Assembly: GCA_002269645.1 (NCBI GenBank)
Contig: NIVC01001965.1
Coordinates: forward strand, 156,254-220,253
DNA from: Macrostomum lignano
Taxonomy: Eukaryota
DNA: 64,000 bases
Direction: 5' to 3'
The position numbers and the translations under genes are program-made. Every line of letters begins with the position of its first letter. The first letter of the stretch is position 1. Positions 1,988 to 51,034 of this stretch are shown here, in pieces. The notes under the pieces are model-generated. The model made no database searches. It was not told the origin of the DNA and saw nothing but the letters and a program-made list of their open reading frames with translations.

Positions 1988-2114
1988 AGTTTACTAATAT
2001 GAGAACATTCGTTCTGTTTTAAAAACGATCTCTATTATTGCGTCTCTCAGTCCCTCATGTACTACAAAACTCAGCCTTCAAATAATTTTCTAAGCTGAAA
2101 GCTGATAAACTTTT

Positions 2115-2215
2115 GAGAGCAGCTCGGACAAAATGCCTGCTGGCTGCATTTGCAATTTGGAAGTCCAGAAGGTGAGAAATTGGGAATTCAGTGCTGAAGA
2201 ACTGAAAACTTCCCA
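2115..2215. mobile_element. Fragment of MITE family B (right arm)
   Basis: gcagctcggacaaaa..cctgctggctgcatttgcaatttgg..gtccag.aggtgagaaattggg.attcagtgctgaa matches 28270-28365. Confidence 0.7.
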
Positions 2216-2238
2216 TCAAAAGCAGCCCCGATTGCGGA

Positions 2239-4495
2239 AGAATCTCGTCAGGGGAATTTCGGCAGGTGAATCTCGGCAGGGGGAATCTCGGCAGGGGAAT
2301 CTCGGCAGGTGAATCTCGGTGGGAGAATCTCGGCAGGTGAATCTCGGCAGGGGAATCTCGGTGGGAGAATCTCGGCAGGTGAATCTCGGCAGGGGAATCT
2401 CGGTGGGAGAATCTCGGCAGGAGAATCTCGGCAGGAGAATCTCGGCAGGTGAATCTCGGTGGGAGAATCTCGGTGGGAGAATCTCGGCAGGGGAATCTCG
2501 GCAGGAGAATCTCGGCAGGTGAATCTCGGTTGGAGAATCTCGGTGGGAGAATCTCGGCAGGTGAATCTCGGCAGGGGAATCTCGGCAGGTGAATCTCGGC
2601 AGGGGAATCTCGGTGGGAGAATCTCGGTGGGAGAATCTCGGCAGGAGAATCTCGGCAGGTGAATCTCGGCAGGAGAATCTCGGCAGGTGAATCTCGGTGG
2701 GAGAATCTTGGTGGGAGAATCTCGGCAGGTGAATCTCGGCAGGGGAATCTCGGCAGGTGAATCTCGGCAGGTGAATCTCGATGGGAGAATATCGGTGGGA
2801 GAATCTCGGCAGGAGAATCTCGGCAGGTGAATCTCGGTGGGAGAATATCGGTGGGGGAATCTCGGCAGGGGAATCTCGGCAGGGGAATCTCGGTGGGAGA
2901 ATCTCGGTGGGAGAATCTCGGCAGGTGAATCTCGGCAGGTGAATCTCGGCAGGAGAATCTCGGCAGGTGAATCTCGGTGGGAGAATCTCGGTGGGAGAAT
3001 CTCGGTGGGAGAATCTCGGTGGGAGAATCTCGGTGGGAGAATCTCGGTGGGAGAATCTCGGCAGGGGAATCTCGGCAGGAGAATCTCGGCAGGTGAATCT
3101 CGGTGGGAGAATCTCGGTGTGAGAATCTCGGCAGGTGAATCTCGGCAGGGGAATCTCGGCAGGTGAATCTCGGCAGGGGAATCTCGGTGGGAGAATCTCG
3201 GTGGGAGAATCTCGGCAGGTGAATCTCGGCAGGTGAATCTCGGCAGGAGAATCTCGGCAGGTGAATCTCGGTGGGAGAATCTTGGTGGGAGAATCTCGGC
3301 AGGTGAATCTCGGCAGGGGAATCTCGGCAGGTGAATCTCGGCAGGTGAATCTCGGTGGGAGAATATCGGTGGGAGAATCTCGGCAGGAGAATCTCGGCAG
3401 GTGAATCTCGGTGGGAGAATATCGGTGGGGGAATCTCGGCAGGGGAATCTCGGCAGGGGAATCTCGGCAGGGGAATCTCGGTGGGAGAATCTCGGTGGGA
3501 GAATCTCGGCAGGTGAATCTCGGCAGGTGAATCTCGGCAGGTGAATCTCGGTGGGAGAATCTCGGTGGGAGAATCTCGGTGGGAGAATCTCGGTGGGAGA
3601 ATCTCGGTGGGAGAATCTCGGTGGAAGAATCTCGGTGGGAGAATCTCGTTGGGAGAATCTCGGTGGGAGAATCTCGGCAGGGGAATCTCGGTGGGAGAAT
3701 ATCGGTGGGAGAATCTCGGCAGGTGAATCTCGGCAGGGGGAATCTCGGCAGGGGAATCTCGGCAGGTGAATCTCGGCAGGGGAATCTCGGTGGGAGAATC
3801 TCGGTGGGAGAATCTCGGTGGGAGAATCTCGGCAGGGGAATCTCGGTGGGAGAATCTCGGCAGGGGAATCTCGGTGGGAGAATCTCGGTGGGAGAATCTC
3901 GGTGGGAGAATCTCGGTGGGAGAATCTCGGTGGGAGAATCTCGGTGGGAGAATCTCGGTGGGAGAATCTCGGTGGGAGAATCTCGGTGGGAGAATCTCGG
4001 TGGGAGAATCTCGGTGGGAGAATCTCGGTGGGAGAATCTCGGCAGGGGAATCTCGGTGGGAGAATCTCGGTGGGAGAATCTCGGCAGGTGAATCTCGGCA
4101 GGGGGAATCTCGGCAGGGGAATCTCGGCAGGTGAATCTCGGCAGGGGAATCTCGGTGGGAGAATCTCGGTGGGAGAATCTCGGTGGGAGAATCTCGGTGG
4201 GAGAATCTCGGCAGGAGAATCTCGGTGGGAGAATCTCGGCAGGTGAATCTCGGCAGGGGGAATCTCGGCAGGGGAATCTCGGCAGGTGAATCTCGGCAGG
4301 GGAATCTCGGTGGGAGAATCTCGGTGGGAGAATCTCGGTGGGAGAATCTCGGCAGGGGAATCTCGGTGGGAGAATCTCGGCAGGGGAATCTCGGCAGGGG
4401 AATCTCGGTGGGAGAATCTCGGCAGGGGAATCTCGGCAGGTGAATCTCGGTGGGAGAATCTCGGTGGGAGAATCTCGGTGGGAGAATCTCGGCAG
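2239..4495. repeat. 14-bp minisatellite with two main monomers (GAATCTCGGCAGGN / GAATCTCGGTGGGA), about 160 copies
   Basis: Direct periodicity. Lies in intron 2 of the claudin-like gene and generates the spurious 822/788-aa ORFs. Confidence 0.97.
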
Positions 4496-5120
4496 TAAAT
4501 AATCCAGCTAATGCATTTCGCACGAAAAGATACGCTAGTGTAGCGCCCTTTCACTTTAATTATCCGTGATTCTTGTGTATGAACTTTTTTTCTTAGAAAC
4601 TCTTCAGTTGCCACTCACTTCAGTAGTTCAAGTCGATCATAAATTGCATTTAGCACAGCTGACAAAGTCAGACTGAAAGTTAGACTGTCTAGTCATTCAT
4701 AAAAATGAAATTATAGCTATCAATAGTGATATGTGTTCCACTTGAGAATCCTAAAGAAAATAAATCGGGGATCTACTCAGTGCTAACTGTCCCAGTTTCT
4801 GGAACAGCTGTCATGAGAGTAATTGGAGTTTAAACTATTAGGATTTTGAGCTTATTACAGGACAACGATGACAAATTCTGCCAAAAGAATAAGAAAAATA
4901 TAGCTATTGCCTGCAAAGAGAGAGGCTGCGATCGGAGGGTGCAGGGGTCCAGATGAAGCCATGAGAAAATTTTATTTGCATTACACTGACCCCATATGAA
5001 TGAAAACTTCCATGAACTGCTGGCTTAGAGTTTGAGTAGGCTAATAGGACGCTAGATTGCAGTTTAGGAGATAAAATAATCCGCTTTATTTTCGCCATGA
5101 AGCATTCTATATTTACTATT

Positions 5121-5767: not shown

Positions 5768-6075
5768 GAATGTGGTGAAACAAAGTTAACAGTGAGTGAT
5801 CTTGCCGCCAATTTCACTAACAGACCAAAGCGTGCCCCGTTTTCTTCAACTGTTGTTCATTAAAATACAAGAGAGAACTCAGCCTGACCCAGAAATGCAA
5901 ATCGCGTTTACAGGCAAAAAAAATTTTTCTCGCTAAAACTGCAGCAACTGTAGCAACCCCCACTGCGGCTCCCCTGAGTGCCGGTGACACTTGGAATTAG
6001 TTGCTTGATTCTACTCAGAATGTTTAATCATGGTGCAGTGCGTAACAGCTGTCTGCAGTTGTATGCCTTGTCTGC

Positions 6076-6802
<727 letters not shown>

Positions 6803-8329
6803 TCTGAATAGGGTATGTTTTTTTTCTATTGTTTTCGTCCTCTATTCGATATAGAAAGTGTGCTCCTCAAAAGGGGTAGCAAATACAGCAATTCAGGGAA
6901 GGCCTTTTGAAAAGAATTTTCGAAGATTGAAAACTGCCTCTTATTCCACACTGATTCAACTCTGGCACGCTGCTACAGCCCTAATGTAAAAAAACTCAAA
7001 ATCGTTTCCAATACAACATCGGATCTCTGAGCAATAAAGCTTCGTGCCATTTCCGTACAACGGCAACGGGCTCCCCCCGATACAATGCTTCCTATTCTGC
7101 AACTGTTTCCAACCATTCTCAAATTTCTGAGCTTTTATTGTCTTCAGCGCAACTGTGAGATAGAAATCTTGCAAGGAAGCAATCATCGAACAAACAAGAG
7201 GTGTGAGGGAAGCGCTCTGTCTCGATGGGAACGAGAGAACTGTAGAGGATTAGCGGCAGTTGATTGAAATTTTTTTGGAGAAAATTCCTGGGACTAAAGC
7301 AGTAAACAAAACGGCAGGTCTACGCTCGTAATTGCTACTTGATGCTTGACGAATCGAATGAGATATTGTATGCTTGTTGAATCCATCGAATTACTATATA
7401 TGGATACAGTTTTATTCAGATGAAATTCGAGAAATCTAAATAAAATCGAAGGTTATTTTTAGCTATTTGCCAATTCAACTGAACTGAGTTATTCAAAAGC
7501 GACAACGGATCATTTTGACGGCCATATGTCATGCTCAAAGTTGACCAGCCAATGAGAAATAAGCAGGGGACGGAATTTAAATGTACGTACACCGCTAGGC
7601 ACTGTACAGTGAGGTGATGGCTAAATAAGAAGCAGCCAGCCAATAAGAAGCCAATAAGAAGCCAATACAAGGGGAAGGAGTCTTGATGTACACAGAGGCA
7701 TTGTACAGTTTACAGTGCTGGTTTTTTAGTGGCCAAGCAGCCAATAAGAAGCAAGCAGAGGGTACGACAATTTACTCCTGCCAACAAATCTTACATTTCC
7801 CAGAGTCTCTCAAAATGACAGGTGTTGCAGCCTCAACAATCAATCAATAATCATGACAGTTTCTGCTTCTAATGCACATAATTTAGAGTGTAAAACAATT
7901 AATTTTCAATAGTCCTTGACCTTATAAAACTTATTCTATAATAGCTACAATGATTTTATGCATTTTGCAATATGCATTTCGTAGCAAACCTTCGACATTG
8001 CATGATCACAAAAAACGCATTAAATCTGTGATTAAGATCAAATTAGCCTAGACGGCACGCAGTAAATTCGCCATATCAACCTTGTCATTGAGATGTTTTT
8101 GCCCCGCTTTCATCTTAACAGCGGGCGAAAACAGCAAGGCTTACCGAGGCTGCTGCGTTAGAGAGAACGGGATGTTTGAGAACTGCATTTCTCTGTGGTT
8201 TCGAAGCTCTCTCAGTTGCCTGTTCGAGCCATCTGTTCGTCTTTTGTAACCTTTCCTTCTTAATCAAAGAGTCTTTCAGAGTGCACTCTCGATTGTCAGT
8301 GCATCATGTTGTTTAGTTAGCCATTTAAT

Positions 8330-10757
<2,428 letters not shown>

Positions 10758-11573: not shown

Positions 11574-11862
11574 ACCTAAACCCTAACCAAAACCCTAACC
11601 TAAACAGTAAAACCCTAACCTAAACCCTAAAACCCTAACCTAAACCCTAAAACCTTAACCTAAACCCTAAAACCCTAACCTAAACCCTAAAACCCTAACC
11701 TAAACCCTGTAACCCTAACCTAAAAAGTAAAACCCTAACCTAAACCCTAAAACCCTAACCTAAACCCTATAACCCTAACCTAAACCCTATAACCCTAACC
11801 TAAACCCTATAACCCTAACCTAAACCCTATAACCCTAACCTAAACCCTATAACCCTAACCTA
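11574..11862. repeat. Telomere-like 20-bp array (AACCCTAACCTAAACCCTAW)n in D2R intron 3
   Basis: Tandem units containing CCCTAA, CCTAA and CCCTAAA motifs. Confidence 0.9.
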
Positions 11863-11951
11863 AGAAACTAATCCTAAGCAGACAATTTAATTGCACGACG
11901 CTTCTGAGCACGGAATCGAACCCAAGCGACATTGAAAAAGCGCTTCCCTAC

Positions 11952-12994
11952 CGAGCACGATGGCCAGAGTCTTTGTCGCTTTCTTTTCCCGCCGCGCCGC
12001 CGACCTGTCGCTTTTCTTTTTCTTCGATTTCTTCTTCAGCTTCAGCTGGAACAGGCGCTTCTGCGACTTGCCGCCAACTGGCTCGGAGGCTTTCGACGGA
12101 GCCGACGCCGCCACCGCCGCCGCTGCCTCAGGCGCCGCCGCTTGAACTGTGCCGCTGTTGTCTGAAGTGGACGGTCCAGCTAAGTTCTGGCTCTCGCGCA
12201 GGGGCATCGGCGACTCCGCCATCTCGTTGGCGTAATCCTCCTCTTCCTCCTCTTCCCCTTCTTCGTCTTCCCCTTCGGCTTCGTAGTCGCCCTTGTCTTT
12301 GAAATCAGCCCGGTTGCCATGGTGACCGCCGGAGTCTCCATGGAGGCCACAGCTGTGCGGAATCGGTGCCTCCCCGGTGTAAATGCCGTCAGTGCGACAG
12401 GCCAGGCAGTCCCGGGCGGACACCGCTGAGACGCTCAGCCGGTCCGGCCGGCTCGGGTTCGCCCGCACCAGCAGCACCGCTGGCGTCCCGCCTCCGCCTC
12501 CGCCATCCTTCTTGCTGCTGCTGTTGTTCTTGGCGGTGCTCTTCTTTTGCTCAGTCAATGCGATGGCGACTTCGTCGGTTCGACCGGCAGTGGCGCCGGC
12601 TCCGTCTGGCGGCTGCTGCTCGGCATCGCCGCGGTTTTTCCGCCGGCTGCCGCCGCTGGCCTTGACGTTCTCGTAGACTTTGCCCCGTCTAGTCGCGGCC
12701 GCTTTCTTAGCTCGAGCCCGAATAACGGTGAAGATGCGGTAGTACAGCACCAGCATCACTATGCAGGGGATGTAGAAGCTGCCCAGGCTGGAGTAGATCA
12801 GGAAGTCGCCGTTAAAAAAGGTGCAGACGTTGCGAAATTTCTTCTGATAGCGGACGCCCTGCAGATTCTGCAGGCCGCAGCCGATTGGCAGGGCGATGCC
12901 GATGGACAACAGCCAACTTCCGGCGATGGTCACGTGAGTGCGCTTGGAGTTCTTGTGCTTGGCGTACTTGATGGGCTGCGTGACCGCGATGAAC
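11952..12994 (-). CDS. D2-like dopamine receptor, exon 3 of 4 (end of DRF, TM4, TM5, long ICL3, start of TM6)
   Basis: Acceptor TGGCAG at 12995, phase 2. FIAVTQPIKYAKHKNSKR...YSSLGSFYIPCIVML...SAARREKKATKTLAIVL. Donor G|GTAGGG, phase 1. Confidence 0.92.
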
Positions 12995-13090
12995 CTGCCA
13001 ATGGGACAGCGACGCGTTTGAGTACTGAGCTCTGGTTTTGAATAGCATTCAGCTGACAATGATCCTGAAATATAGATTTCTCAGCAACCC

Positions 13091-16601: not shown

Positions 16602-16805
16602 CTGGCAATAAAATTGTGGGGTGGAGGGGGCGAGTTTCCATTCAAGCTCAGGGATTTTAGATGCCAATTTCCGCTGAATGAATGAGACTTCGGTAATGAG
16701 CTTAATAAGAGCTGCATATCTATGCGAAAGGTATCTAAGGAGTTGCTGTGAGGCAGAAGCCCTTAAAGCGGCATTGCACACTAAATACGGAGTCTTTCTA
16801 AAGCA

Positions 16806-17941
16806 GTGTGCACTATTGCTACAGAGCTTCTATGGTCCAGTGTACACCAATGCTACAGAGCTTCTATGGTCCACTGTGCTCCAATGCTACACAGATTCTA
16901 TGGTCCAGTGTGCACCAATGCTACAGAGCTTCTATGGTCCACTGTGCTCCAATGCTACAGAGCTTCTATGGTCAAGTGTACACCAATGCTACAGAGCTTC
17001 TATGGTCCACTGTGCTCCAATGCTACAGAGCTTCTATGGTCAAGTGTACACCAATGCTACAGAGCTTCTAAGGTCCAGTGTGCACCAATGCTACAGAGCT
17101 TCTATGGTCAAGTGTACACCAATGCTACAGAGCTTCTATGGTCCAGTGTACACCAATGCTACAGAGCTTCTAAGGTCCAGTGTGCACCAATGCTACACAG
17201 ATTCTATGGTCCAGTGTACACCAATGCTACACAGATTCTATGGTCCAGTGTGCACCAATGCTACACAGATTCTATGGTCCAGTGTACACCAATGCTACAC
17301 AGATTCTATGGTCCAGTGTACACCAATGCTACACAGATTCTATGGTCCAGTGTGCACCAATGCTACATAGATTCTATGGTCCAGTGTGCACTAATGCTAC
17401 ACAGATTCTATGGTCCAGTGTGCACTAATGCTACATAGATTCTATGGTCCAGTGTGCACTAATGCTACATAGATTCTATGGTCCAGTGTGCACTAATGCT
17501 ACACAGATTCTATGGTCCAGTGTGCATCAATGCTACATAGATTCTATGGTCCAGTGTGCACCAATGCTACACAGATTCTATGGTCCAGTGTGCACCAATG
17601 CTACACAGATTCTATGGTCCAGTGTGCACCAATGCTACACAGATTCTATGGTCCAGTGTGCACCAATGCTACACAGATTCTATGGTCCAGTGTGCACCAA
17701 TGCTACACAGATTCTATGGTCCAGTGTGCACCAATGCTACACAGATTCTATGGTCCAGTGTGCACCAATGCTACACAGATTCTATGGTCCAGTGTACACC
17801 AATGCTACATAGATTCTATGGTCCAGTGTACACCAATGCTACATAGATTCTATTATCCAGTGTGCACTAATGCTACATAGATTCTATGGTCCAGTGTGCA
17901 CTAATGCTACATAGATTCTATGGTCCAGTGTGCACCAATGC
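16806..17941. repeat. 34-bp minisatellite (GGTCCAGTGTGCACCAATGCTACACAGATTCTAT)n, about 33 copies
   Basis: Direct periodicity with a polarised variant gradient. In D2R intron 1. Confidence 0.95.
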
Positions 17942-18743: not shown

Positions 18744-20005
18744 CATAGATTAGCAATCCATTCTAATCCTAATATTTCAATGACTATAAGTTAGCAATTT
18801 ATTCTAATCCTCATATTTATAGACTATAGATTAGCAATCCATCTTAATCCTCATATTTATAGACTATAGATTAGCAATCCATTTTAATCCTCATATTCAT
18901 AGACTATAGATTAGCAATCCATTCTAATCCTTATCTATAGACTATAGATTAGCAATCCATTTTAATCCTCATATTCATAGACTATAGATTAGCAATCCAT
19001 TTTAATCCTCATATTCATAGACTATAGATTAGCAATCCATTTTAATCCTCATATTCATAGACTATAGATTAGCAGTCCATTCTAATCCTTATATTCACAG
19101 ACTATAGATTAGCAATCCATTCTAATCCTCATATTCACAGACTATAGATTAGCAGTCCATTCTAATCCTTATATTCATAGACTATAGATTAGCAATCCAT
19201 TTTAATCCTCATATTCATAGACTATACATTAGCAATCCATTCTAATCCTTATATTCACAGACTATAGATTAGCAATCCATTCTAATCCTCATATTCACAG
19301 ACTATAGATTAGCAATCCATTCTAATCCTTATATTCATAGACTATAGATTAGCAGTCCATTCTAATCCTTATATTCATAGACTATAGATTAGCAGTCCAT
19401 TCTAATCCTTATATTCATAGACTATAGATTAGCAGTCCATTGTAATCCTTATATTCATAGACTATAGATTAGCAATTCATTCTAATCCTTATATTCATAG
19501 ACTATAGATTAGCAGTCCATTCTAATCCTTATATTCATAGACTATAGATTAGCAGTCCATTCTAATCCTTATATTCATAGACTATAGATTAGCAGTCCAT
19601 TCTAATCCTTATATTCATAGACTATAGATTAGCAGTCCATTCTAATCCTTATATTCATAGACTATAGATTAGCAATCCATTCTAATCCTTATATTCACAG
19701 ACTATAGATTAGCAGTCCATTCTAATCCTTATATTCATAGACTATAGATTAGCTATCCATTTTAATCCTCATATTCATAGACTATACATTAGCAATCCAT
19801 TCTAATCCTTATATTCACAGACTATAGATTAGCAATCCATTCTAATCCTCATATTCACAGACTATAGATTAGCAATCCATTCTAATCCTTATATTCATAG
19901 ACTATAGATTAGCAGTCCATTCTAATCCTTATATTCATAGACTATAGATTAGCAGTCCATTCTAATCCTTATATTCATAGACTATAGATTAGCAGTCCAT
20001 TCTAT
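18744..20005. repeat. 40-bp minisatellite (ATAGATTAGCAATCCATTCTAATCCTYATATTCATAGACT)n, about 31 copies
   Basis: Direct periodicity. In D2R intron 1. Confidence 0.95.
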
Positions 20006-23980: not shown

Positions 23981-24174
23981 TCAGGCAGGCGAGCCGGAGA
24001 CAAGCAGCTTAGATTGGTTTGATTTACTCGCTTCGGCTCGTAGGGGACGGCTGGTATCCACTGCAGGCTCACCTTGAAATGTTCGGGGACGATCTACTAC
24101 TTTAAAGAAGAAATTGATCTGATTGTCCGTGCGCTGAAGATTAGTTTAGTTGCGAGTGTTTTCTCGCGATAGCG

Positions 24175-24686
24175 CTTTAGCACCAGGGGCTTTAGCACCA
24201 GGGGCTTTAGCACCAGGGGCTTTAGCACCAGGGGCTTTTGCACCAGAGGCTTTAGCACCAGGGGCTTTAGCACCAGGGGCTTTAGCACCAGGGGCTTTAG
24301 CACCAGGGGCTTTAGCACCAGGGGCTTTAGCACCAGGGGCTTTAGCACCAGGGGCTTTAGCACCAGGGGCTTTAGCACCAGGGGCTTTAGCACCAGGGGC
24401 TTTAGCACCAGGGGCTTTAGCACCAGGGGCTTTAGCACCAGGGGCTTTAGCACCAGGGGCTTTAGCACCAGGGGCTTTAGGACCAGGGGCTTTAGGACCA
24501 GGGGCTTTAGCACCAGAGGCTTTAGCACCAGAGGCTTTAGCACCAGGGGCTTTAGCACCAGGGGCGTTAGGACCAGTGGCTTTAGGACCAGGGGCTTTAG
24601 CACCAGGGGCTTTAGCACCAGGGGCGTTAGGACCAGGGGCTTTAGCACCAAGGGCTTTATCACCAGAGGCTTCAGCACCAGGGGCG
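24175..24686. repeat. 15-bp minisatellite (TTAGCACCAGGGGCT)n
   Basis: About 34 copies, about 200 bp upstream of the D2R ATG. Confidence 0.95.
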
Positions 24687-25162
24687 TCAAAGCCGCTGCA
24701 GCGGGGCGCAATAAACTTATGGGGCCCACACCCATGACTACGCCCCTGAACTGTTTTAAACCTGATTTTATGACGCCATGCAACACGCAGGGCCCTGTAA
24801 TTTTTCCATCATAGTAGCAGCGGTTTTGATCAATCCTGCAGCTTCTGTATTGAAGCAGCGGCATTCCAGATTTAGCTGCAGATCTTACAAGATCCCAGGA
24901 GAGGTGGATGGGGGGGAGCTCAGAAAGATCAGCAGGAAATGTTCGAGTGCTGCACCCCTATATATAGAAGGTAACAGAAGGCAGAAGAAAGAAAAGAACG
25001 AAGATGAGAGAGAGCAAGAGAGGAGTGCAATCATTGCAATTGCCAAGCTTTAAGGCAGCCGTGAGGAGGTTGAAGAGGCCAAAATGCCTTGGAAAAATGC
25101 AAATTCATCTGTCATTGCGACCCGAGATGCGGAGCACCAAGGTCGCCTCCGTCTCTCTCCCC

Positions 25163-33138: not shown

Positions 33139-34780
33139 GGCAGTGCTTATCCCCACAGTACCGTAGGAATAATTTCTGTCTTATTCCAACGGTACCGTGC
33201 GAATAATTTTCTGCTTATCCGCACGGCATACTGAGGAGATAGCTGCCCTATCTTCTACATATGCTGTGCAAATAATTTTCTGCTTATCCGCACGGCACAC
33301 TGACGAGATAGCTGCCCTATCTTCTACATATGCCATGCGAATAATTTTCTGCTTATCCGCACGGCACACTGACGAGATAGCTGCCCTATCTTCTACATAT
33401 GCCATGCGAATAATTTTCTGCTTATCCACACCTCACACTGACGAGATAGCTGCCCTATCTTCTACATATGCCGTGCAAATAATTTTCTGCTTATCCGCAC
33501 GGCACACTGACAAGATAGCTGCCCTATCTTCTACATATGCCGTGCGAATAATTTTCTGCTTATCCGCACGGCACGCAATTTAAAACATTTGTTACTACAC
33601 AAAAAAATTCTTTCTCATAGAAAAGTTGTTAAATCTTTATTTCTTTAGAACAAATGTTCAAGCCAAGTTATGTTGTTATACTGCACTCAAATTGTATGTA
33701 CTAAACTTCCCACACAGCATATGTAGAAGATAGGGCAGCTATCTCGTCAGTGTGCCGTGCGGATAAGCAGAAAATTATTCGCATGGCATATGTAGAAGAT
33801 AGGGCAGCTATCTCATAGCTCATTCCATATAAGCATGGTCGTAACATGACAGGTTATTTTTACTTATAAAATGAAATCTAATAATAGAATATACTAAACC
33901 AATATTTTAAATGAAAGATTATTTTGTCTAGAATATATTTATAGAGTTTCATATAGATATCATCATTAGTATAGATGCTATTAAACCTTAAATGACACTT
34001 ATGGTCGTAACGACAGGATTTTTGACATATAGAAACTAAAAGGTAAAAGTCTTATAACATTTTTCATTTTTGATATTTTGCAATACATTTTTAAAATTTG
34101 ACTAAGAACATCTTTAGAAATCATACTCTTTTATTAGAATATATAAACTCAAAAGGCAACAAAGATACAAAAGAAAAGGCAGCCTTATGGTCGTAACATT
34201 ATGGTCGTAACATATTTTTTTCTGTCACTTTCAGTAACTTTGAGCCGTTTGAAGTACTAATACATTAAAAATATAATAGATTATTTGGTCACCAATGCTT
34301 TTATCTGATGATGCAAGTACTATACTTTTATCTATAGTTTGTTTCAACCTTCAAAAGCTTTCTATTTGTTTTTAAAAGGTACAAAATCTTAATGATGTCT
34401 TTTGCTTCGAAAAATGTCCAAATTTTTATAAAAATGACTTTTTGCCAATTGATAACATACTAATCCAACATTTTACCATTCCTTTATTCTTAGATTGTAT
34501 ATATTGCACAATATAAACATTTGGTAAAAAAATAGGCTAATTAGGCAATGGCAAGCAAAAATATTGACTTTTTTCTATTTTCCAAATATGTCCATCTTAT
34601 ATGGAATGAGTCTCATCAGTGTGCCGTGTAGATAAGCAGAAAATTATTCGCACGGCATATGTAGAAGATAGGGCAGCTATCTCGTCAGTGTGCCGTGCGG
34701 ATAAGCAGAAAATTATTCGCACGGTACCGTTGGAATAAGACAGAAATTATTCCTACGGTACTGTGGGGACAAGCACTGCC
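33139..34780. mobile_element. Non-autonomous MULE/foldback-like element with long TIRs and 69-bp subterminal tandem repeats
   Basis: GGCAGTGCTT(A/G)TCCCCACAGTACCGTAGGAATAATTTCTGTCTTATTCCAACGGTACCGTGCG is inverted at both ends. 9-bp TSD AAAAATATA at 33130-33138 and 34781-34789. Confidence 0.85.
33819..34610. mobile_element. Nested AT-rich TIR element inside the MULE right arm
   Basis: 15-bp TIR CTCATTCCATATAAG / CTTATATGGAATGAG. Internal ATGGTCGTAAC repeats. It interrupts a 69-bp unit, with TCTCA(T) duplicated on either side. Confidence 0.75.
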
Positions 34781-34991
34781 AAAAATATAAGATCAAACAT
34801 TGGCCAGTTTGTCATTGATCATAATCAAGGTTCTATGTGTTCATCACTAATTATTATGTGTTTTTATGTATTCTTTTTACTCTTGAATATTCATCACAAT
34901 CATTAATAATCACTAATTAGATTTCCATTAACAGGCATACTGCATATATTGCTTAGTCAAATTCAAAGCAGATTTTAAAGATCATACTTAC

Positions 34992-35130
34992 ACTGTGCAG
35001 GTGGTATACAAATGTAATTCCGGAAGAATGAGCTCGATTTTGCTCGTTCCTTCAAAAAATTGGCTATTGGTTTTCCAAGCTGTCGAACAGCAAGGTACAG
35101 AAGTTTAGCAACGGGAAATTCCGCAACCAT
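34992..35130 (-). CDS. OPA3: OPA3-like protein, exon 1 of 2
   Basis: [46 protein letters not shown] matches the OPA3 N-terminus. Donor T|GTAAGT, phase 1. Confidence 0.9.
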
Positions 35131-35904
35131 TATTTTTTTGAAGTGCCAAAACCCATTCAAGAAATGCTAATTGCTATTGCTAAAAGTAAAAGGTAAAAAC
35201 AAAGATTTTATTTGAAACAATTTTGTAGCAAACGGCGAGAGTAGATATATATTAAATTTTGGCTTCAAATAGCAAAGTACTTATTCATCCATCTGACATT
35301 CAATTCAATTCATTCAACAAGCCGCATTTTTGCGTTAGTTTCCACGAAAATTATAATGTTAAATTTAGGTGGTCATCTTAACAAAAATTAGGCCGCAATT
35401 TTCAGACAACAGAAAGCTCAAGATAACACAGTCAAAGCAGAGATAGCGGAGACACTAGATGACGATTATAATGTAATTATATCAGTATCAGTAGGTATCA
35501 GATATCAGTATTTTGAGATTTTGCTTGGGATTTACGAGCTATGGATTTGATTGTCGCGCTAGGATAAGTAGCATCGCCTCAACGCTAGGCTCTACCACAA
35601 ACCCTCAAGCTCCCCAAACTCAAGTACTATACTTCTAAATGTATCTTTGAATATTAAGAAATGGGGTCACGCCAGAGAGTCAAATGATCCAAGGGCTAAT
35701 AGTTATACGATGCTTTAGTCTGCAGTAGTTTTTCACTTATTGATCACTTACTGACCACTTACTGATAGCGTACTCATATCGTGGTGGACATCTAGTCAAT
35801 TCAACCAAAGATATTTCTACCTTAGCTAATTATCTAACCAGCGACAACCTGAACAAGAAAGTCTCTCTGATTATCTGATCTCAATTAGCAGAACCGACCT
35901 CAGG

Positions 35905-36240
35905 CAGATGTGATGGCCCTAACCGGCCAGGATTCTTCCAGAGACATATCTCGTTGCAAAACGGTTCCCACCTGTCCTTTCTGTAGCATAGGAGATGAGA
36001 CCGCGGAGCATCACATCACCTTCTGTCCTACATGTACTTCTCAATAAGAAGGCGCGGCACAAACACCTCGATCACCCCCAGCGGATGGACGAGCTGTCCA
36101 CCCGGACAACATCCGTGAACCTCGCCCTTCTTCCGAGATTCCGGCCGAACGAGGGTTGCCGATGCCTCCTCTGTGAACCTGCCGACTACTGGCGGGGGCT
36201 GGGCGCACAAGCCTTGTATGAATTCTTTTACTGCGATAGG
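35905..36240 (+). mobile_element. Degraded non-LTR retrotransposon 3' end
   Basis: One frame reads [39 protein letters not shown], the LTG(H)...CxxC...ETxEH...CP C-terminal zinc-knuckle pattern of RNase H-containing LINE clades. A frameshift and stop follow. Confidence 0.65.
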
Positions 36241-36713
36241 GGCCTCGCTGGTCACCGCGGTTTAATCACGGCGCTTGCGCCCCCCGCCATACCGATCGTT
36301 ATTCATTTTTATAACGAAATCGAAAAAAATGCATACTATATACATGCACATGTAAAGCTAAAGTTTTTATAAGTTTTATATGCATTAATTAAATCGAGAA
36401 CATGTAGACTGGCCAAAGCACACGTGTATTCATCTTCGTTGATTCGAATCCATACTGCATACACTGCATTTGTACGAGTATTTGAGGAACTTCACGTTGC
36501 TGAGCCAATCAGATCCCGTTGGTCCGTTCGATGTTTGTAACAGAGTAGCGCGCCTATTACTCTGCATACGATATGGGTATAAATACCTCCTAGCACTCAG
36601 TGGTACAGAAGTTGCGCCAAGAAACTATAGTTGCACTCGACTAACCTGCACTCGAAAAGATTTTTTAGTCTCTAGGATCGATAATTCTCTACTAGCCAGC
36701 ATCCAGCAGCACA

Positions 36714-37003
36714 ATGCGATTTGCAATCATCAACGTGTCCATGGCTTTGCTAGCTATGACGCTGCTGCTCAGCACCAGCTGCTCCACAATGCGCATCTCT
36801 GAGCCATCCGAGCTGCTGCGATCTTTGTCAGCCCGTCCGCGCCCGGCGTCGTTCCTGCTGGCTGGCGATCCGGCCGGATTCTTCGGCAACGCCTACAGCT
36901 GGAGTCCCAACTACGTTCAGCGGCGCTCGGACAATAAGAACAAAATGTACAAAGCTCTGTTGGCCTCGCTGAAGCCCAACACGTACAACCCGAGCGATTT
37001 CAG
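36714..37003 (+). CDS. Candidate neuropeptide precursor, exon 1 (signal peptide, propeptide, RR cleavage site)
   Basis: MRFAIINVSMALLAMTLLLSTSCS is a signal peptide. GC-rich codon-like composition, dibasic RR, strong donor CAG|GTGAGA (phase 2 within an Arg codon). Confidence 0.65.
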
Positions 37004-37100
37004 GTGAGAATTTTATTGCTTAAATTCAATCATTTTCTAGTGTCGCTAAATCTATATATAGACACTCAATTCCAACCAAACACAATTTTAAACATTTCAG

Positions 37101-37113
37101 AGTTGGCCGCTGA
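37101..37113 (+). CDS. Candidate neuropeptide precursor, terminal exon (R-V-G-R-stop)
   Basis: Acceptor TTTCAG at 37100 gives AG+A GTT GGC CGC TGA, an amidation signal G-R at the C-terminus. AATAAA at about 37273 and 37317. Confidence 0.55.
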
Positions 37114-37434
37114 GCAAAAGGCCGAAAAAGACCAATTTTATACACTGACTCGCTGGACAGCTGGAATGACATTAAAACTGTAACAAGAAACAAGCGGCTA
37201 ATGAGCATAAGAGCTAGAACTAGATTGTGATTATTAACGCAGGCAAATTTGTACGAACATTAACCTATATAAAAATAAAAGTCATTTAAATCTATCGATT
37301 TAAACTACTATACACAAATAAACTGCTGGAAGTTGTGTTTTTTTAATTTATTGATCTGCAATGCGATGCATAAAAGCATCCGGCCCTCGGGTCATTTAAA
37401 ACTTCACAATAGAAATCCGGCCCGCTTAAGATTT

Positions 37435-37975
<541 letters not shown>

Positions 37976-39418
37976 TCCAAAGGAATAGAGGAGAGAGGAG
38001 ATAGATTCTGAACGATGTTTATGGTCGAAAGGCTTGATTTTTAGCAGACTGCCAGTTCGCGGTTTCATGAGCGTAGCAGTTCTGCTCAAAGGACGCAAAC
38101 TGTAACTGTTAAAGTTTAACATCGACGAGAGGCGGCTATAAGAATGCAGATTCCACTATTCGACGCGCTTCGAGTAGCTGATCTCTCGGTCGATAATCGT
38201 CAGCCGGGAGAGTTCAAAGATCGCGTGACTTCAAGCAGCGCTTCCGAATGAATCCAGAAACGTTCAATCTCGTTGATTCATTGAACTTCCCTCTCGTAAA
38301 CGGCCCAGGTAATCAAATTTTACTATTGCAACGCTTCATGGCCGCCGGGCAGAGTCAGCGACGCTAGAATTCTGAGAAACAGCAGTCTTTCAAAGACAAT
38401 TCGAAGTCACGAAAAGCCGCTTCACTGGCCCTATGTCAAGGAGCTCTGGATATTTGAGCCCTCTCATCTATGTTTGTCTATGTCATAACCCTACTGCTAG
38501 TTAGCAGTGCTTCATGAAATTGTTCCCTAGGGTAAAAAAATTCGTCGAACCTCTGCTTCAAAGGATCGTCGGGGTATTAAGCTGGTTCGAGCTTATAAAA
38601 TTTCGAGTTTTCGAATCGGATCGATCTATAAGATTAGATTATAGATTAGGAATCCTCCAGTCAGTGCTTAATAAATAATTCAGAGTTTGTTAACTTTAAC
38701 TAGCTGCCGAACCCCCAAAGGAGGATTGCAAGATAAAAAATGCATTGGGAAATATTTCAGATGTTCCAATGGCACATCTGCAAAACAATCTTGGAATCAA
38801 AATAGATTATAAAGCTAAGCTTAAATCGTATAATCAAATTAGCAAGAGCAATAAATAGGTGATTAAGAAATGAGCTGAGCCAACTCTCGTTAAGCAGCTA
38901 TTATCTAGAATTGATGTCTTTTCAGCGATAATAAATTGTTGTTTTTTTCATGACTATACAGCCTCTTAGGTAAGCACGAAGTCCCTGATTCACTTGAGAA
39001 TAGATTTACATGTACAGAGGGCTTTCCGCTGAAGGACAACTCTTTGTCACACACGGCTCCTATTGAAGGATAGCCAGTCTGTTATCCAAAAAAGCAGCCA
39101 TAAATGGTGTCCAAAAATAGCAGAAATTAATTGCTAGCAACGAACTCGTAGCTAAAAGCAGCCACCTAAATGAAGAAATGTTGCTGCACTCGGTAGAGCT
39201 ATACAGATACTTGGTCTGTTAGCTTTGCCTGTTCTTCAGTCCTTAGTTCCTTATAGTTTCCCTGGTTCCCCAGTTTCTTACTTTCCTTAGTTTCCCAGGT
39301 TTCTTAGTTCCCCTGGTTCCTATAGTTTTTTTAGTTTATTAGCTTTCTTAGTTCCTTAGTTTCCTTGGCTCCTTAGTTTCTTAATTTCCTACTTTCTTAC
39401 TAGTTTGTTAGCATCTTT

Positions 39419-40424
39419 GTTGTTGTTAAACGGGGGTGGAAAGCCAGGGGCTTACCGCGGATCAGCCCGAAAGGGGCTCTACCGCAGGGATCTGACTGTG
39501 GGCCATACTGCCAGGGGCATGTTAGCCCGAGAGGCCACGATTGGGACCAGAGCTCAGGACTCTGGTGAGAACCTAGTGAATTGGTGCTACTAGCCCAAAC
39601 CTACGGTACAAGACACCGCCAACCCAAAAAGTGGAATCAGGGACGGTGCTAGGACCGAGTTCACCCAGGCCACCACCCAGCAGACAAGTCCTCGGGAGTG
39701 CGCAGAAAAAATTGGAATTAGAGAAAAAAGCTTGGGTTACTACTGAAAGCGGTCCGAGAGCGGGGAAACCCCGAAGTCTACGGAAAAGGGCTTAATTATT
39801 GGAGCGAGTCTGGAAGGCTTGTTTCCGAGGGCGAGACTCCAGGCAGGAAGACCTTCTACCGGCTACAAACCCAAGGGTATCGCCTATCCAGCTCAATAAT
39901 GGAGGCCAGGCCAAGGGGTCGGGAAGGGGCACGAGGAGCAAGAGGACCCGGACTCAGCCGGTATCCCCGATTCGGGACGAACATTCAACCCAGGACACCA
40001 ATCCACTGTCAGGATGAGAGCCAGAGACACTTAGGCAGGGAGACAACCAGAGGAGCCAGCAGATGGACCAAGGACAGCGCAGGATGGACCGGGCAGGGAG
40101 GGCAGAGCTCATAACTCCGGAATATTGGAGCGGCAGTCAAAGGCCTTACATTAAGATAAAACAGATAAAACTGGGGATAAAAACAGGACGGAGGAGCACC
40201 TGAACCCTACTTGCAGGCTACTTACTACCTGCTTCCCGGGGCACAGCCTCAGGGCTGGCGTCAACTAGGCTCTACCGTACACCTTCGTGAATGGTCATTC
40301 TTTCCTGCAGGGCGGGTACGACCGGGGGGCTCAAGTCCCGTTCTAGCCACACTGCAGTCCAGAGTACGCACTCACTCCAGGTACACCCCCCTAAACCAAG
40401 GCCGAGGGCCGAAATAAGTCTCTT
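39419..40424. mobile_element. About 1-kb GC-rich non-coding TE-like insert (solo LTR or retroposon, unclassified)
   Basis: Abrupt compositional switch within a T/C-rich repeat tract. Begins GTTGTTGTTAAAC, has internal GATAAAA repeats, no convincing ORF, and is bracketed by a duplicated flank. Confidence 0.45.
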
Positions 40425-49253: not shown

Positions 49254-49347
49254 CTGCAATTAAAGAAACAATACATATAGTTGATGAAGTTATTCGCATT
49301 CGCTAGTTTACATAGACTGTTGATAAGAACAAGTGGGGTTTACAAAC

Positions 49348-50871
49348 CTCTGAGCATAGCTGAAAATAGGTCATGACAACGGAGATCTGCGCGCAGCTAA
49401 TAATGAGGATAATGAATACGGCCAGCAGGAAACCAAATAGATAATAGAACTGCTTCTCCCAGATAGCGGTCAGGATGAAGAACAGTTCAATAAACACGGC
49501 GCCAAACGGTAGAATCCCGGTGATTAGGATGGAGATAAGCACGTTGCTGTACCATTTCTGATCTGGCACAGCGCGCGGGATCTGATTGGTTCGAACCGGG
49601 TGCTCGTACGGCTGCTTGCGGAAGCCGAAGAACGAGCCGGCCATGACCAGCGGGACGGACACGCACAGCCACAGGGCCAGCAGAGCTACCATGGTGCCAA
49701 ATGGCACAGCTCCAGACGAGGCCTTGGCCCATACAAAGAAGTTAATAAAGAATCCGGTGCCAAGCACAATAGCCGGCAGTAGCAGGCCAGTTAGCAGGGC
49801 GGCAGATTTCCACTGTACACCTTTCATTGTCTTGTACATCCTGGCCGAGAAATAGCCGGACACCAGGCCGGAGAACACGTAGAAGAATGTGGCCGCGGTC
49901 ATCAGGCTGCCCCGGCTAGCCGGGCTCAGCATGCCCAGCGCGGCCAGGCAGATGGTGGACAGAAACATCATGAACAGCTGGACGCCGGAGCCCAGCAGGG
50001 CGATCAACAGGCGGGCCCGTCTGGGCGGGCGGAACACGTCGCCGTGGACAAGCTTCCAGCCGGTCTCTTCTAGCGTCTCCTCCAAGTCGTCGTCTCGATT
50101 GTACTTGGCAATGTCACGGCGAAGGGTGCGCACCATGATCATGGTGACAACGCCGGCTAGGAAGAAGATAATAACAATCGAATTGATGATGGAGAACCAG
50201 TGAATCTGGAAGTCTTGCATAGTCAGGTAGATATCCCAACGGCTGGACCAGGGCACCTTAGACGGGCGCCAGACAACTTCGTAGGTGTACACGACCTTAT
50301 CCAGAGTGTTAGTGACCTGCTGAGGCTCCAACCGGCTGCCGGCCTCCTCCTTGAAGACGCACCGATCGACGCCGGAACTGCGATCGAAGCTAACTTGGCT
50401 GGCTTTGATTGAAGACGGCTCAACTTCGAAGCCAACAATTCGATACATCTGATGCTCGTCCAGATTGTAACTGACAATAAACTTGAGGTGATTGTGCACA
50501 AACAGCTGGGCCTTGTCCTTCAGCTCGTAGCCGAGTCTGTAGCCAAGTTCGTATTGAGTCTCCCCTGTGCCCAGCATCTTGAACTTGGTGGCCACTGGCA
50601 GATTGTCGGCCATCAAGTGCACAGTGTACTTATTGTGGATCCGGTCAGTGAGCATAGTGGCCTGTTCAGGTTGCAGCGACACCTCGCATAATTTGCGACA
50701 TTTTTCATCCCTGCCAGCCTTCAATACGTAGGGCGTGTTCACTATGCGGTCGCCTTTGAGAATTTCGCCAAGATTTTCAGCTTTGTACTCGAAGCCCTTT
50801 TCCGGAGTGCAGAACGGCATCGAGTAGTATTCGTAGGGCAGCTGGGTCTTCACGCTAGTCAGCTTCACCGC
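49348..50871 (-). CDS. TM9SF4: TM9SF4-like, exon 2 of 4
   Basis: Acceptor TTGCAG at 50872. AVKLTSVKTQLPYEYYSMPFC...IHWFSIINS...ETGWKLVHGDVFRPP...PVRTNQIPR...GILPFGAVFIELFFIL. Donor GAG|GTTTGT. Confidence 0.92.
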
Positions 50872-51034
50872 CTGCAATGCGAGAGGGTGGGATACTTCTA
50901 TGTAGTTTGTTTGCAATGCACTTTAGCGTGCTTAGGATTAGTAGCAGTTAAGGACTGGGGTTTAGTAGGTCACTGAAGCACATGGAGTTGGTAGCAAAAA
51001 CTGATTGATTTAGTAATAATATTTTAGTGCTTAC

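What the first reader, a model, noticed from the sequence alone, without database searches (positions are those of the whole stretch)
36714..37113. Candidate novel amidated neuropeptide: SDNKNKMYKALLASLKPNTYNPSDFRV-amide
Seen: a signal peptide, then a propeptide, RR, and 25 residues up to a phase-2 intron inside an Arg codon. A 97-nt intron ending TTTCAG adds V-G-R-stop, and poly(A) signals follow. Known: G-R/K at the C-terminus signals amidation, and NPY/NPF genes have a phase-2 intron in the Arg preceding the terminal F/Y-amide. Inference: a 27-aa single-copy peptide with NPY/F-like gene architecture but an RV-amide end that I cannot assign to a known family. The 13-nt terminal coding exon would be missed by ORF or annotation pipelines.
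Basis: partly seen in the sequence, partly recalled or inferred. Interest (0 to 1): 0.7.

Follow-up and report, generated by a model that had tools for sequence, protein, structure and literature searches.

The report
Orphan flatworm amidated-peptide precursor gene
This is a real gene of the flatworm Macrostomum lignano, already in GenBank as a "hypothetical protein", whose 100-residue product looks like the precursor of an amidated 27-residue signalling peptide; its intron sits where neuropeptide Y/F genes have theirs, but its sequence matches no known peptide family.

Summary
ATG is at 36714, exon 1 is 36714-37003, and a 97-nt GT...AG intron (37004-37100) splits an Arg codon after its second base. 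A 13-nt coding tail (37101-37113) adds V-G-R-stop.

The window is Macrostomum lignano assembly Mlig_3_7. The spliced 100-aa product is identical to GenBank PAA62198.1 (BOX15_Mlig023917g2), so the claim that annotation would miss the mini-exon is wrong. That annotation is built from RNA-seq, which gives the junction indirect transcript support. Two further genomic copies (g1, g3) keep the same splice sites and an unchanged 27-mer.

Signal peptide, a single RR site and a terminal Gly-Arg fit an amidated peptide precursor. The intron position and phase match the published hallmark of NPY/NPF genes, and the overall layout matches planarian npy-10.

Sequence tests for NPY/NPF membership fail. Pfam finds nothing, a family HMM scores about 0 bits, there is no RxRF/Y motif, and no PP-fold is predicted. 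No relatives were found outside M. lignano.

Verdict: a plausible, uncharacterised, lineage-restricted peptide-hormone gene with NPY-type gene architecture. Expression site, processing and receptor are untested. Moderate interest.

The parts
36578..36583 (+). TATAAA box about 135 nt upstream of the ATG; putative core promoter
   Evidence: motif position. The region 36560-36713 is nearly identical among the three genomic copies. Promoter function is inferred.
36714..36785 (+). Start codon and signal peptide (aa 1-24, MRFAIINVSMALLAMTLLLSTSCS)
   Evidence: Arg2 forms the n-region, a 17-residue hydrophobic core follows, and small residues sit at -3/-1 (S-C-S). AF2 models helix 2-24. No SignalP run was available, so the cleavage site is inferred.
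36786..36920 (+). N-terminal propeptide (aa 25-69, TMRISEPS...SWSPNYVQ)
   Evidence: It has no usable internal convertase site, because the Arg residues at 41 and 43 are each followed by Pro. The only 'homologues' of this stretch are repeat-inflated artefacts.
36921..36926 (+). Dibasic cleavage site Arg70-Arg71 (CGG CGC)
   Evidence: It is the only dibasic pair in the precursor. Cleavage is inferred.
36927..37003 (+). Exon-1 part of the predicted mature peptide: S72...F96 plus the first two bases (AG) of Arg97
   Evidence: The amino-acid sequence is unchanged in all three genomic copies, with two synonymous differences only.
37004..37100 (+). 97-nt phase-2 intron (GTGAGA...TTTCAG) inside the Arg97 codon
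   Evidence: 28% GC against 57% in the exon. The same junction is used in the deposited CDS PAA62198.1. Donor and acceptor are identical in copies g1 and g3.
37101..37104 (+). Third base of Arg97 plus Val98, the C-terminal residue of the predicted peptide
37105..37113 (+). Gly99 (amide donor), Arg100 (removed by carboxypeptidase) and the TGA stop
   Evidence: Amidation is inferred from the standard Gly-basic rule.
37114..37322 (+). 3' UTR with poly(A) signals ATTAAA 37171, AATAAA 37274 and AATAAA 37317
   Evidence: A (CT)n array starts at 37449. The actual poly(A) site was not determined here.

Best explanation
The locus is the expressed M. lignano gene Mlig023917.g2. It encodes a 100-residue secretory prepropeptide.

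Proposed mechanism:
1. The signal peptide (about aa 1-24) directs the product into the secretory pathway.
2. A prohormone convertase cuts after Arg70-Arg71.
3. A carboxypeptidase removes Arg100.
4. Peptidylglycine alpha-amidating monooxygenase converts Gly99 into the amide of Val98.

The product would be SDNKNKMYKALLASLKPNTYNPSDFRV-NH2 (monoisotopic 3112.61 Da, net charge about +2.5). It has a short N-terminal helix and a flexible Pro-containing tail ending in Arg-Val-amide. It would be released as a neuropeptide or peptide hormone acting on an unidentified receptor, most likely a rhodopsin-type GPCR.

Splicing of the 97-nt intron is obligatory for this outcome, because the unspliced message stops right after Arg97 and has no amidation signal.

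The gene layout is that of flatworm NPY-superfamily genes such as planarian npy-10: signal, propeptide, dibasic site, one peptide, a phase-2 intron in the penultimate Arg codon, and a terminal mini-exon encoding X-Gly-basic-stop. The peptide sequence itself is an orphan.

Shown: the ORF, the splice junction as used in a transcript-derived public annotation, the motifs, and conservation among three gene copies.
Inferred: cleavage, amidation, cell type and receptor.
For: - Exact anatomy at the stated coordinates.
- The spliced product is identical to PAA62198.1. The Mlig_3_7 GenBank annotation was derived from RNA-seq and transcriptome assemblies plus TransDecoder, not from ab initio prediction.
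- Three genomic copies keep the splice sites and the 27-mer. Among them there are 4 synonymous and 2 non-synonymous differences (about 74 against 226 sites, Fisher p = 0.034), and both replacements lie outside the mature peptide.
- Codon GC3 of 75% matches a bona fide gene in the window, and the intron is AT-rich.
- There is a TATA box, a good Kozak context, no upstream ATG, and poly(A) signals.
- AF2 models a signal helix and helix 65-85 followed by a coil tail.
- Precedent for this architecture in planarians: npy-10 has an N-terminal propeptide, a KR site, and a peptide followed by GKR-stop. npy-11 has the same intron but ends in a non-aromatic RPRL-amide.
- The intron rule is stated.
Against: - There is no direct evidence of translation, processing or amidation, and no expression-site data. 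'Mlig023917' was not found in the supplements I could search, which were partly truncated.
- No orthologue was found outside M. lignano, so conservation rests on recently duplicated copies with few informative differences.
- The signal peptide was judged by eye, not with SignalP.
- A signal peptide, one RR and a C-terminal GR can also occur in small secreted proteins that are not neuropeptides.
Confidence: 0.68

Rival explanations
1. It is by descent a member of the NPY/NPF superfamily. It would be a highly diverged paralogue, like planarian 'atypical' npy-11, that kept the family's diagnostic intron and the penultimate Arg but lost the RxRF/Y motif and the PP-fold. This refines the best explanation rather than excluding it.
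For: - The intron lies between nucleotides 2 and 3 of the codon for the Arg preceding the C-terminal amidated residue, which is the conserved NPY/NPF feature.
- The precursor layout equals Smed-npy-10, and Smed-npy-11 shows that a non-aromatic C-terminus occurs in the family.
- Flatworms have an expanded NPY family.
- Two Leu residues align with conserved Leu positions when the peptides are anchored at the C-terminus.
Against: - Pfam PF00159 gives no hit even at E<=10.
- An HMM built from 42 NPY/NPF peptides scores the peptide at -0.5 to 1.4 bits, no better than shuffles.
- A C-terminus-anchored PSSM gives p of about 0.2.
- The C-terminus is DFRV, not RxRF/Y/L.
- The peptide is 27 aa with no polyproline segment, and the predicted helix ends 13 residues before the C-terminus.
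- Phase-2 introns naturally fall in AG|R Arg codons and occur in basic codons of other peptide genes such as CCWamide/agatoxin-like peptide, so the marker is suggestive, not unique.
Confidence: 0.3
2. It is a small secreted product of a non-neuronal gland, for example a pharyngeal, prostate/seminal-fluid, adhesive or host-defence peptide. It may or may not be processed and amidated, and it is not a neuropeptide.
For: - It is taxonomically restricted, with no homologues.
- M. lignano has many fast-evolving lineage-specific secreted reproductive proteins (titles and abstracts).
- The peptide is cationic (pI 9.7) and partly helical, as many amidated defence peptides are.
Against: - The hydrophobic moment is modest (maximum 0.48) and mean hydrophobicity is low, which is not typical of membrane-active peptides.
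- A dedicated spliced mini-exon that only adds X-Gly-Arg is the layout of neuropeptide genes.
- The gene was not found in the reproduction-related lists I could search, but those files were truncated.
Confidence: 0.15
3. It is a transcribed but functionless or very young orphan ORF. The prohormone-like motifs would be coincidental and no stable peptide would be made.
For: - No orthologues were found anywhere.
- The only conservation is among recent duplicates.
- The window is extremely repeat-rich, and many long ORFs in it are repeat artefacts.
Against: - Gene-like codon bias, with GC3 of 75%.
- dN/dS of about 0.16 among copies.
- TATA box, clean 5' UTR and strong splice sites, with four independent prohormone features in the correct order.
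- The locus itself is not repetitive.
Confidence: 0.1
4. It is a remnant or member of the BBE (berberine-bridge-enzyme-like FAD oxidase C-terminal) domain family, as the UniRef name 'BBE domain-containing protein' implies.
For: - The UniRef cluster name.
- By eye, and from my memory of the domain only, the 27-mer has a Y..L...K...Y-N-P..FR pattern reminiscent of the BBE C-terminal motif.
Against: - Current Pfam gives no hit at E<=10 for the precursor or its parts.
- No PDB chain matched at E<=10 apart from an unrelated PsaL chain at E = 0.12. My expectation that PDB contains BBE-like oxidases is from memory, not from that output.
- No FAD-binding-domain coding sequence lies upstream. The gene is a stand-alone 100-aa unit with its own promoter and signal peptide.
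Confidence: 0.02

Closest known systems
Schmidtea mediterranea npy-10 and npy-11 (planarian NPY superfamily; npy-11 = 'atypical neuropeptide Y')
   Same: - Small precursor of 71-80 aa against 100 aa here, with a single amidated peptide.
- An intron inside the codon of the Arg that precedes the C-terminal amidated residue.
- npy-10 likewise has signal, N-terminal propeptide, dibasic site, peptide, then X-G-K-R-stop with no C-flanking peptide.
- npy-11 likewise ends in a non-aromatic aliphatic amide, RPRL-NH2.
   Different: - All planarian members keep the Y-L-x-x-L-N-x-Y...(G/S/A)RPR-X core, and most hit Pfam PF00159.
- The Macrostomum peptide has none of this. It ends DFRV, gives no Pfam or HMM signal, is shorter (27 aa), and has a Pro-rich non-helical C-terminal half.
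NPY/NPF family in general (vertebrate NPY/PYY/PP, invertebrate NPF)
   Same: A phase-2 intron in the penultimate Arg codon, C-terminal amidation through Gly plus basic residue, and one peptide per precursor.
   Different: - No RxRF/Y-amide motif.
- No PP-fold.
- The peptide does not directly follow the signal peptide.
- There is no C-flanking peptide and no second intron.
PRXamide peptides ending in -PRVamide (insect CAPA/periviscerokinins) and planarian ppl-1 (YFSPRM/L-amide)
   Same: A C-terminal Arg followed by an aliphatic amide. The RV-amide ending is otherwise known mainly from CAPA peptides (ppl-1).
   Different: - Those are short peptides, often multi-copy, with an obligatory F-x-P-R-x-amide core.
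- Here there is no Pro before the Arg, the peptide is 27 aa and single-copy, and the gene structure differs.
PDF-type precursors (recalled from memory, not tested)
   Same: About 100-aa precursor with signal, associated propeptide, dibasic site and one C-terminal amidated peptide followed by Gly-basic-stop. There is a loose L-L-x-S-L-(K/P)-(P/K)-N resemblance.
   Different: PDF is 18-20 aa and ends differently. No significant similarity was detected by any search. This is a lead only.

Membership tests
NPY/NPF superfamily | Intron between nucleotides 2 and 3 of the codon for the Arg that precedes the C-terminal amidated residue | tested here: met
   AG|gtgaga...tttcag|A at 37003/37101. The rule is quoted.
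NPY/NPF superfamily | C-terminal R-x-R-F/Y-amide (RPRF/RPRY; RPRL in the atypical npy-11) | tested here: not met
   The C-terminus is S-D-F-R-V-amide. Only the penultimate Arg is kept. RPR is invariant in the family alignments.
NPY/NPF superfamily | Detectable sequence similarity to the pancreatic-hormone/NPF domain (Pfam PF00159 or a family HMM) | tested here: not met
   No Pfam hit at E<=10. A 42-sequence NPF HMM gives -0.5 to 1.4 bits, and 182-999 of 2000 shuffles score as high. The anchored PSSM gives p of about 0.2.
NPY/NPF superfamily | PP-fold: about 36 aa, an N-terminal polyproline stretch packed on an amphipathic helix that runs to within about 5 residues of the C-terminus | tested here: inconclusive
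   The peptide is 27 aa with no polyproline segment. Single-sequence AF2 (mean pLDDT 63) puts the helix at residues 65-85 and a 13-residue coil with two Pro before the C-terminus. The model confidence is too low to be decisive.
NPY/NPF superfamily | Peptide directly follows the signal peptide and is followed by a C-flanking peptide | tested here: not met
   A 45-aa propeptide plus RR precedes the peptide, and the precursor ends at G-R. Planarian npy-7 and npy-10 are exceptions within the family.
NPY/NPF superfamily | Ligand of an NPY/NPF-type GPCR | not testable with these tools
   Needs receptor pharmacology.
Amidated neuropeptide / peptide-hormone precursor (generic) | N-terminal signal peptide | tested here: met
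   MRFAIINVSMALLAMTLLLSTSCS has a basic n-region, a 17-residue hydrophobic core and small residues at -3/-1. AF2 models helix 2-24. This is a heuristic judgement, with no SignalP run.
Amidated neuropeptide / peptide-hormone precursor (generic) | Convertase site N-terminal of the peptide, and Gly plus basic residue(s) at its C-terminus | tested here: met
   Q-R-R|S at aa 70-71 and V-G-R-stop at aa 98-100.
Amidated neuropeptide / peptide-hormone precursor (generic) | Transcribed and spliced as predicted | tested here: met
   Support is indirect. The public CDS PAA62198.1 equals the spliced translation, and the annotation pipeline was RNA-seq and transcriptome based. Raw reads were not inspected.
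Amidated neuropeptide / peptide-hormone precursor (generic) | Mature peptide conserved more strongly than the rest of the precursor across species | tested here: inconclusive
   Only three recent intragenomic copies are available. The 27-mer is invariant and the two replacements fall in the signal peptide and propeptide, with p = 0.034. No orthologues were found.
Amidated neuropeptide / peptide-hormone precursor (generic) | Expressed in neurons or endocrine cells, and the amidated peptide is detectable | not testable with these tools
   No expression or peptidomic data could be found.
BBE (FAD-oxidase C-terminal) domain, as named in UniRef | Significant match to Pfam PF08031, preceded by an FAD-binding domain | tested here: not met
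   No Pfam hit at E<=10, no PDB relatives, and no upstream coding sequence of that kind.
PRXamide (pyrokinin/CAPA/NMU) | C-terminal F-x-P-R-x-amide | tested here: not met
   The sequence reads P-S-D-F-R-V, with no Pro preceding the Arg.
Prokaryotic Ig-like/cadherin-like repeat proteins (top hits of the exhaustive search) | A domain-level match that is significant on its own | tested here: not met
   The full-sequence E-values of 4e-15 and 3e-13 are sums over 7-9 repeats. Every single stretch scores <=13.2 bits, with an independent E >= 8.8e3.

The most novel reading that the evidence does not exclude
The gene is a genuine descendant of the bilaterian NPY/NPF gene in an early-branching flatworm, and its peptide has diverged beyond all sequence recognition: the RxRF/Y motif is lost, the C-terminus is Arg-Val-amide, and there is no PP-fold. 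It would keep only the family's phase-2 Arg-codon intron and the terminal X-Gly-basic mini-exon. That would make intron position the only surviving homology marker. It would also imply a co-diverged receptor, perhaps one of the expanded flatworm NPY-receptor-like GPCRs.
Probability: 0.3. Interest if true: 0.5.

Novelty: new member of a known kind. Interest (0 to 1): 0.35.

Why it matters
If confirmed, it adds a lineage-specific amidated peptide to the small, poorly charted neuropeptide repertoire of Macrostomum lignano. This is the one flatworm with stable transgenesis, so expression and function could be tested directly.

It is also a useful test case for gene structure as a homology marker in neuropeptide evolution, namely the NPY/NPF phase-2 intron. 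Either an NPY-family gene can lose every sequence hallmark, or the "diagnostic" intron can arise convergently in an unrelated peptide gene.

It is not a surprise in kind. Orphan candidate prohormones turn up in every flatworm neuropeptide survey, and planarians already have an atypical NPY gene with a non-aromatic C-terminus.

Tried and rejected
1. Homology searches
- The word-indexed search of 5.8 billion proteins found only the M. lignano cluster itself.
- The exhaustive HMMER search of 1.84 billion representatives found the protein itself plus prokaryotic repeat proteins. Their E-values are repeat-summation artefacts, with every stretch <=13 bits.
- PDB gave nothing relevant. Pfam and NCBIfam gave nothing at E<=10.
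- The JGI metagenome scan gave no relative.

2. Looking for canonical M. lignano NPF genes to test paralogy
- Two profile searches with planarian and invertebrate NPY/NPF alignments returned planarian, mollusc and arthropod NPFs but no M. lignano protein. No bridge could be built, and all three homology searches are now spent.

3. NPY/NPF similarity tests by HMM and by anchored PSSM were negative.

4. The BBE-domain label from UniRef could not be reproduced.

5. There is no paralogue of the gene elsewhere in the window. The GPCR exon 24 kb away is aminergic-type, not a peptide receptor, so a ligand-receptor pairing idea was dropped.

6. Literature
- No paper in the searchable library mentions Mlig023917.
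- A query that included 'FRVamide' among its terms showed zero occurrences of it in every paper listed.
- There are no -RVG(K/R) precursors in the planarian prohormone catalogue, and no such sequence strings in the main text of two recent schistosome peptide papers.
- Koziol et al. 2016 could not be opened. McVeigh et al. 2009 did not turn up in my searches and I did not try to open it. Prior description there cannot be excluded.

7. Expression data: the gene ID is absent from the supplements of four Macrostomum papers, but several of those files were truncated in storage, so this is uninformative.

Full report
**What is in the sequence**

- A TATAAA box lies at 36578. There is no ATG between it and the start codon at 36714, which has A at -3.
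- The open frame encodes MRFAIINVSMALLAMTLLLSTSCS (a basic n-region, a 17-residue hydrophobic core, and small residues at -3/-1).
- A 45-residue propeptide follows, then the only dibasic pair (Arg70-Arg71, 36921-36926), then 25 residues and the first two bases (AG) of an Arg codon.
- The exon ends at 37003, followed by GTGAGA.
- The acceptor TTTCAG|A at 37100/37101 closes a 97-nt phase-2 intron.
- The remaining 13 coding bases (A GTT GGC CGC TGA) complete Arg97 and add Val-Gly-Arg-stop.
- Unspliced, the frame reads AGG TGA, so the protein would stop right after Arg97. The only thing splicing contributes is Val plus the Gly-Arg amidation/cleavage signal.
- Exon 1 is 57% GC with GC3 of 75%, similar to 71% for the TM9SF ORF elsewhere in the window. 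The intron is 28% GC.
- Poly(A) signals follow at 37171, 37274 and 37317.

**Whose gene it is**
- The spliced 100-aa product hits one protein cluster in 5.8 billion sequences: 'hypothetical protein BOX15_Mlig023917g1/g2/g3' of Macrostomum lignano, all 100 aa.
- Window 33714-40113 is 100% identical to NIVC01001965.1:189967-196366 of assembly GCA_002269645.1.
- The deposited protein PAA62198.1 (g2) is identical to my spliced translation.
- The annotated gene span is exactly 400 nt in all three copies.

The GenBank annotation of this assembly was made from genome-guided RNA-seq assemblies (StringTie/TACO), a de novo transcriptome and TransDecoder (Wudarski et al. 2017). The junction therefore has indirect transcript support. 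I did not see reads myself.

**The three copies**

M. lignano DV1 is a hidden polyploid, and g1, g2 and g3 sit next to the same OPA3 neighbour. Donor and acceptor are identical in all three. The CDS carries four synonymous and two non-synonymous differences: A14V in the signal peptide and A40T in the propeptide. The 27-mer is unchanged, with two synonymous changes. With about 74 synonymous and 226 non-synonymous sites this gives dN/dS of about 0.16 and Fisher p = 0.034. That is a weak hint of purifying selection, not proof.

**Is it an NPY/NPF gene?**

[quoted passage not shown] 2020, citing Mair et al. 2000).
- Collins et al. 2010 found the same in ten of the eleven planarian npy genes, including npy-11. 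They call npy-11 an atypical NPY because it lacks the C-terminal aromatic residue. Its precursor ends ...QIVSRPRL-GKR.
- Planarian npy-10 has the same overall layout as the Macrostomum gene: signal peptide, N-terminal propeptide, KR, one peptide, then Y-G-K-R-stop with no C-flanking peptide. npy-7 also has a long N-terminal extension.

So the gene architecture here is an exact match to known flatworm NPY-superfamily genes.

Every sequence-level test fails, however.
- Pfam (including PF00159, which hits most planarian NPYs) reports nothing even at E<=10.
- An HMM I built from 42 NPY/NPF peptides scores the precursor at 1.4 bits, the peptide at 0.0 bits and the last 36 residues at -0.5 bits. Of 2000 shuffles, 182, 652 and 999 respectively score at least as high.
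- A PSSM anchored at the C-terminus, which is the intron position, gives a score reached by 20% of shuffles. Only two Leu and the Arg line up.
- The invariant RPR core is replaced by D-F-R.
- Single-sequence AlphaFold2 (mean pLDDT 63) places a helix at residues 65-85 and leaves the last 13 residues of the peptide (LKPNTYNPSDFRV) as coil. This is unlike a PP-fold, but the confidence is low.
- Phase-2 introns preferentially fall in AG|R codons, and a phase-2 intron in a basic codon is also described for CCWamide/agatoxin-like peptide genes. The marker is therefore suggestive rather than unique.

I could not find canonical NPF genes of M. lignano to test paralogy. Two profile searches returned planarian, mollusc and arthropod NPFs but no Macrostomum protein. 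I therefore file it as working like, and built like, an NPY-superfamily gene. Membership is unproven, at about 0.3.

**Other identities considered**
- The exhaustive HMMER search listed prokaryotic repeat proteins at E down to 4e-15. Locally re-run, each matched stretch is at most 13.2 bits with an independent E of 1e4 or worse. The matches are a short G-N-x-F-S-W-T-P-x-Y-x-Q motif repeated 7-9 times. This is a summation artefact, not homology.
- The UniRef name 'BBE domain-containing protein' cannot be reproduced. There is no Pfam hit and no PDB relative. No FAD-binding coding sequence lies upstream, and the gene is stand-alone between OPA3 and a (CT)n array.
- The C-terminal RV-amide recalls CAPA-type PRV-amides, but the obligatory F-x-P-R-x core is absent.
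- The planarian prohormone catalogue has no -RVG(K/R) precursor, and the main text of two recent schistosome peptide papers contains no such sequence strings.
- No paralogue exists elsewhere in the window.
- The 7TM exon at 11887-13059 is dopamine/5-HT-receptor-like, not a peptide receptor.

**Most likely mechanism**

The precursor enters the secretory pathway. It is cut after Arg70-Arg71, trimmed of Arg100 and amidated at Val98 using Gly99. The product is SDNKNKMYKALLASLKPNTYNPSDFRV-NH2 (monoisotopic 3112.61 Da, pI 9.7). The other Arg residues of the propeptide are followed by Pro or lack the upstream basic residue expected for monobasic cleavage, so a single bioactive product is expected. 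The ORF, the splice and the motifs are shown. Cleavage, amidation, cell type and receptor are inferred.

Confidence:
- About 0.68 that it is a processed, amidated signalling peptide.
- About 0.15 that it is a non-neuronal gland or defence product.
- About 0.1 that it is a functionless young ORF.

These are separate estimates rather than a partition, and the NPY-descent reading overlaps with the first.

**Novelty and interest**

The gene sequence is public but uncharacterised. I found no paper naming it, and a query that included FRV-amide showed no occurrences of that term in the papers listed. Koziol et al. 2016 could not be opened, and McVeigh et al. 2009 did not turn up in my searches. It is a new candidate member of a known kind, namely flatworm amidated prohormones. 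The twist is that NPY-type gene architecture is combined with an orphan peptide, which planarian npy-11 partly anticipates. Interest is moderate to low (0.35). It becomes more interesting if orthologues or receptor pharmacology show true NPY descent.

Noticed in passing
window 1-64000 (e.g. 2239-4495, 6075-6802, 8313-10756, 16804-17941, 18745-20004): The window is packed with tandem arrays: 36 TRF rows at score >=200, including a 14-nt unit x161, (CTAT)182 and (TTAG)611. Most of the 'long ORFs' in the mechanical ORF list (for example 2055-4523, 822 aa, and the 'extensin-like' 24097-24864) are read-throughs of these repeats, not genes.
   Followed up: partly
window 37449-37854: A (CT)n microsatellite of about 400 bp starts roughly 130 nt after the last poly(A) signal of the peptide gene. 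The three genomic copies diverge strongly here, while the gene itself is nearly identical among them.
   Followed up: no
window 11589-11863: A 20-nt tandem unit AAAACCCTAACCTAAACCCT x13.8, which looks like a degenerate interstitial telomere-like (CCCTAA) array. It lies directly next to the GPCR exon.
   Followed up: no
window 11887-13059 (-): An ORF containing transmembrane helices 3-5 of a rhodopsin-family GPCR. Its best PDB relatives are dopamine D2/D4 and 5-HT1 receptors (E down to 8e-16), so it is an aminergic receptor exon and not a candidate receptor for the peptide.
   Followed up: partly
window 49303-50916 (-): A 537-aa ORF with a full-length EMP70/TM9SF (endomembrane protein 70) domain at E = 8e-191. 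It appears to be an intron-poor housekeeping gene, and I used it as the codon-bias yardstick (GC3 71%).
   Followed up: partly
window 33714-35130 (-): The upstream neighbour is an OPA3-domain gene (152-aa product) according to the public gene calls. The same neighbour flanks all three copies of the peptide gene, which shows they are duplicated blocks rather than dispersed paralogues.
   Followed up: partly
window 37041 and 37062: Two upstream AG dinucleotides inside the intron are in frame with exon 1. If used as acceptors they would insert 20 or 13 residues and still end in ...HFRVGR-stop. The intron's downstream part is therefore open in the coding frame. Whether these acceptors are ever used is unknown.
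   Followed up: no
UniRef entries A0A1I8GCT0 / A0A1I8GCV1 / A0A1I8H1X6 (the product of window 36714-37113 and its two copies): UniRef calls these proteins 'BBE domain-containing protein'. Current Pfam finds no such domain, so the public name looks like a stale borderline automatic annotation.
   Followed up: yes
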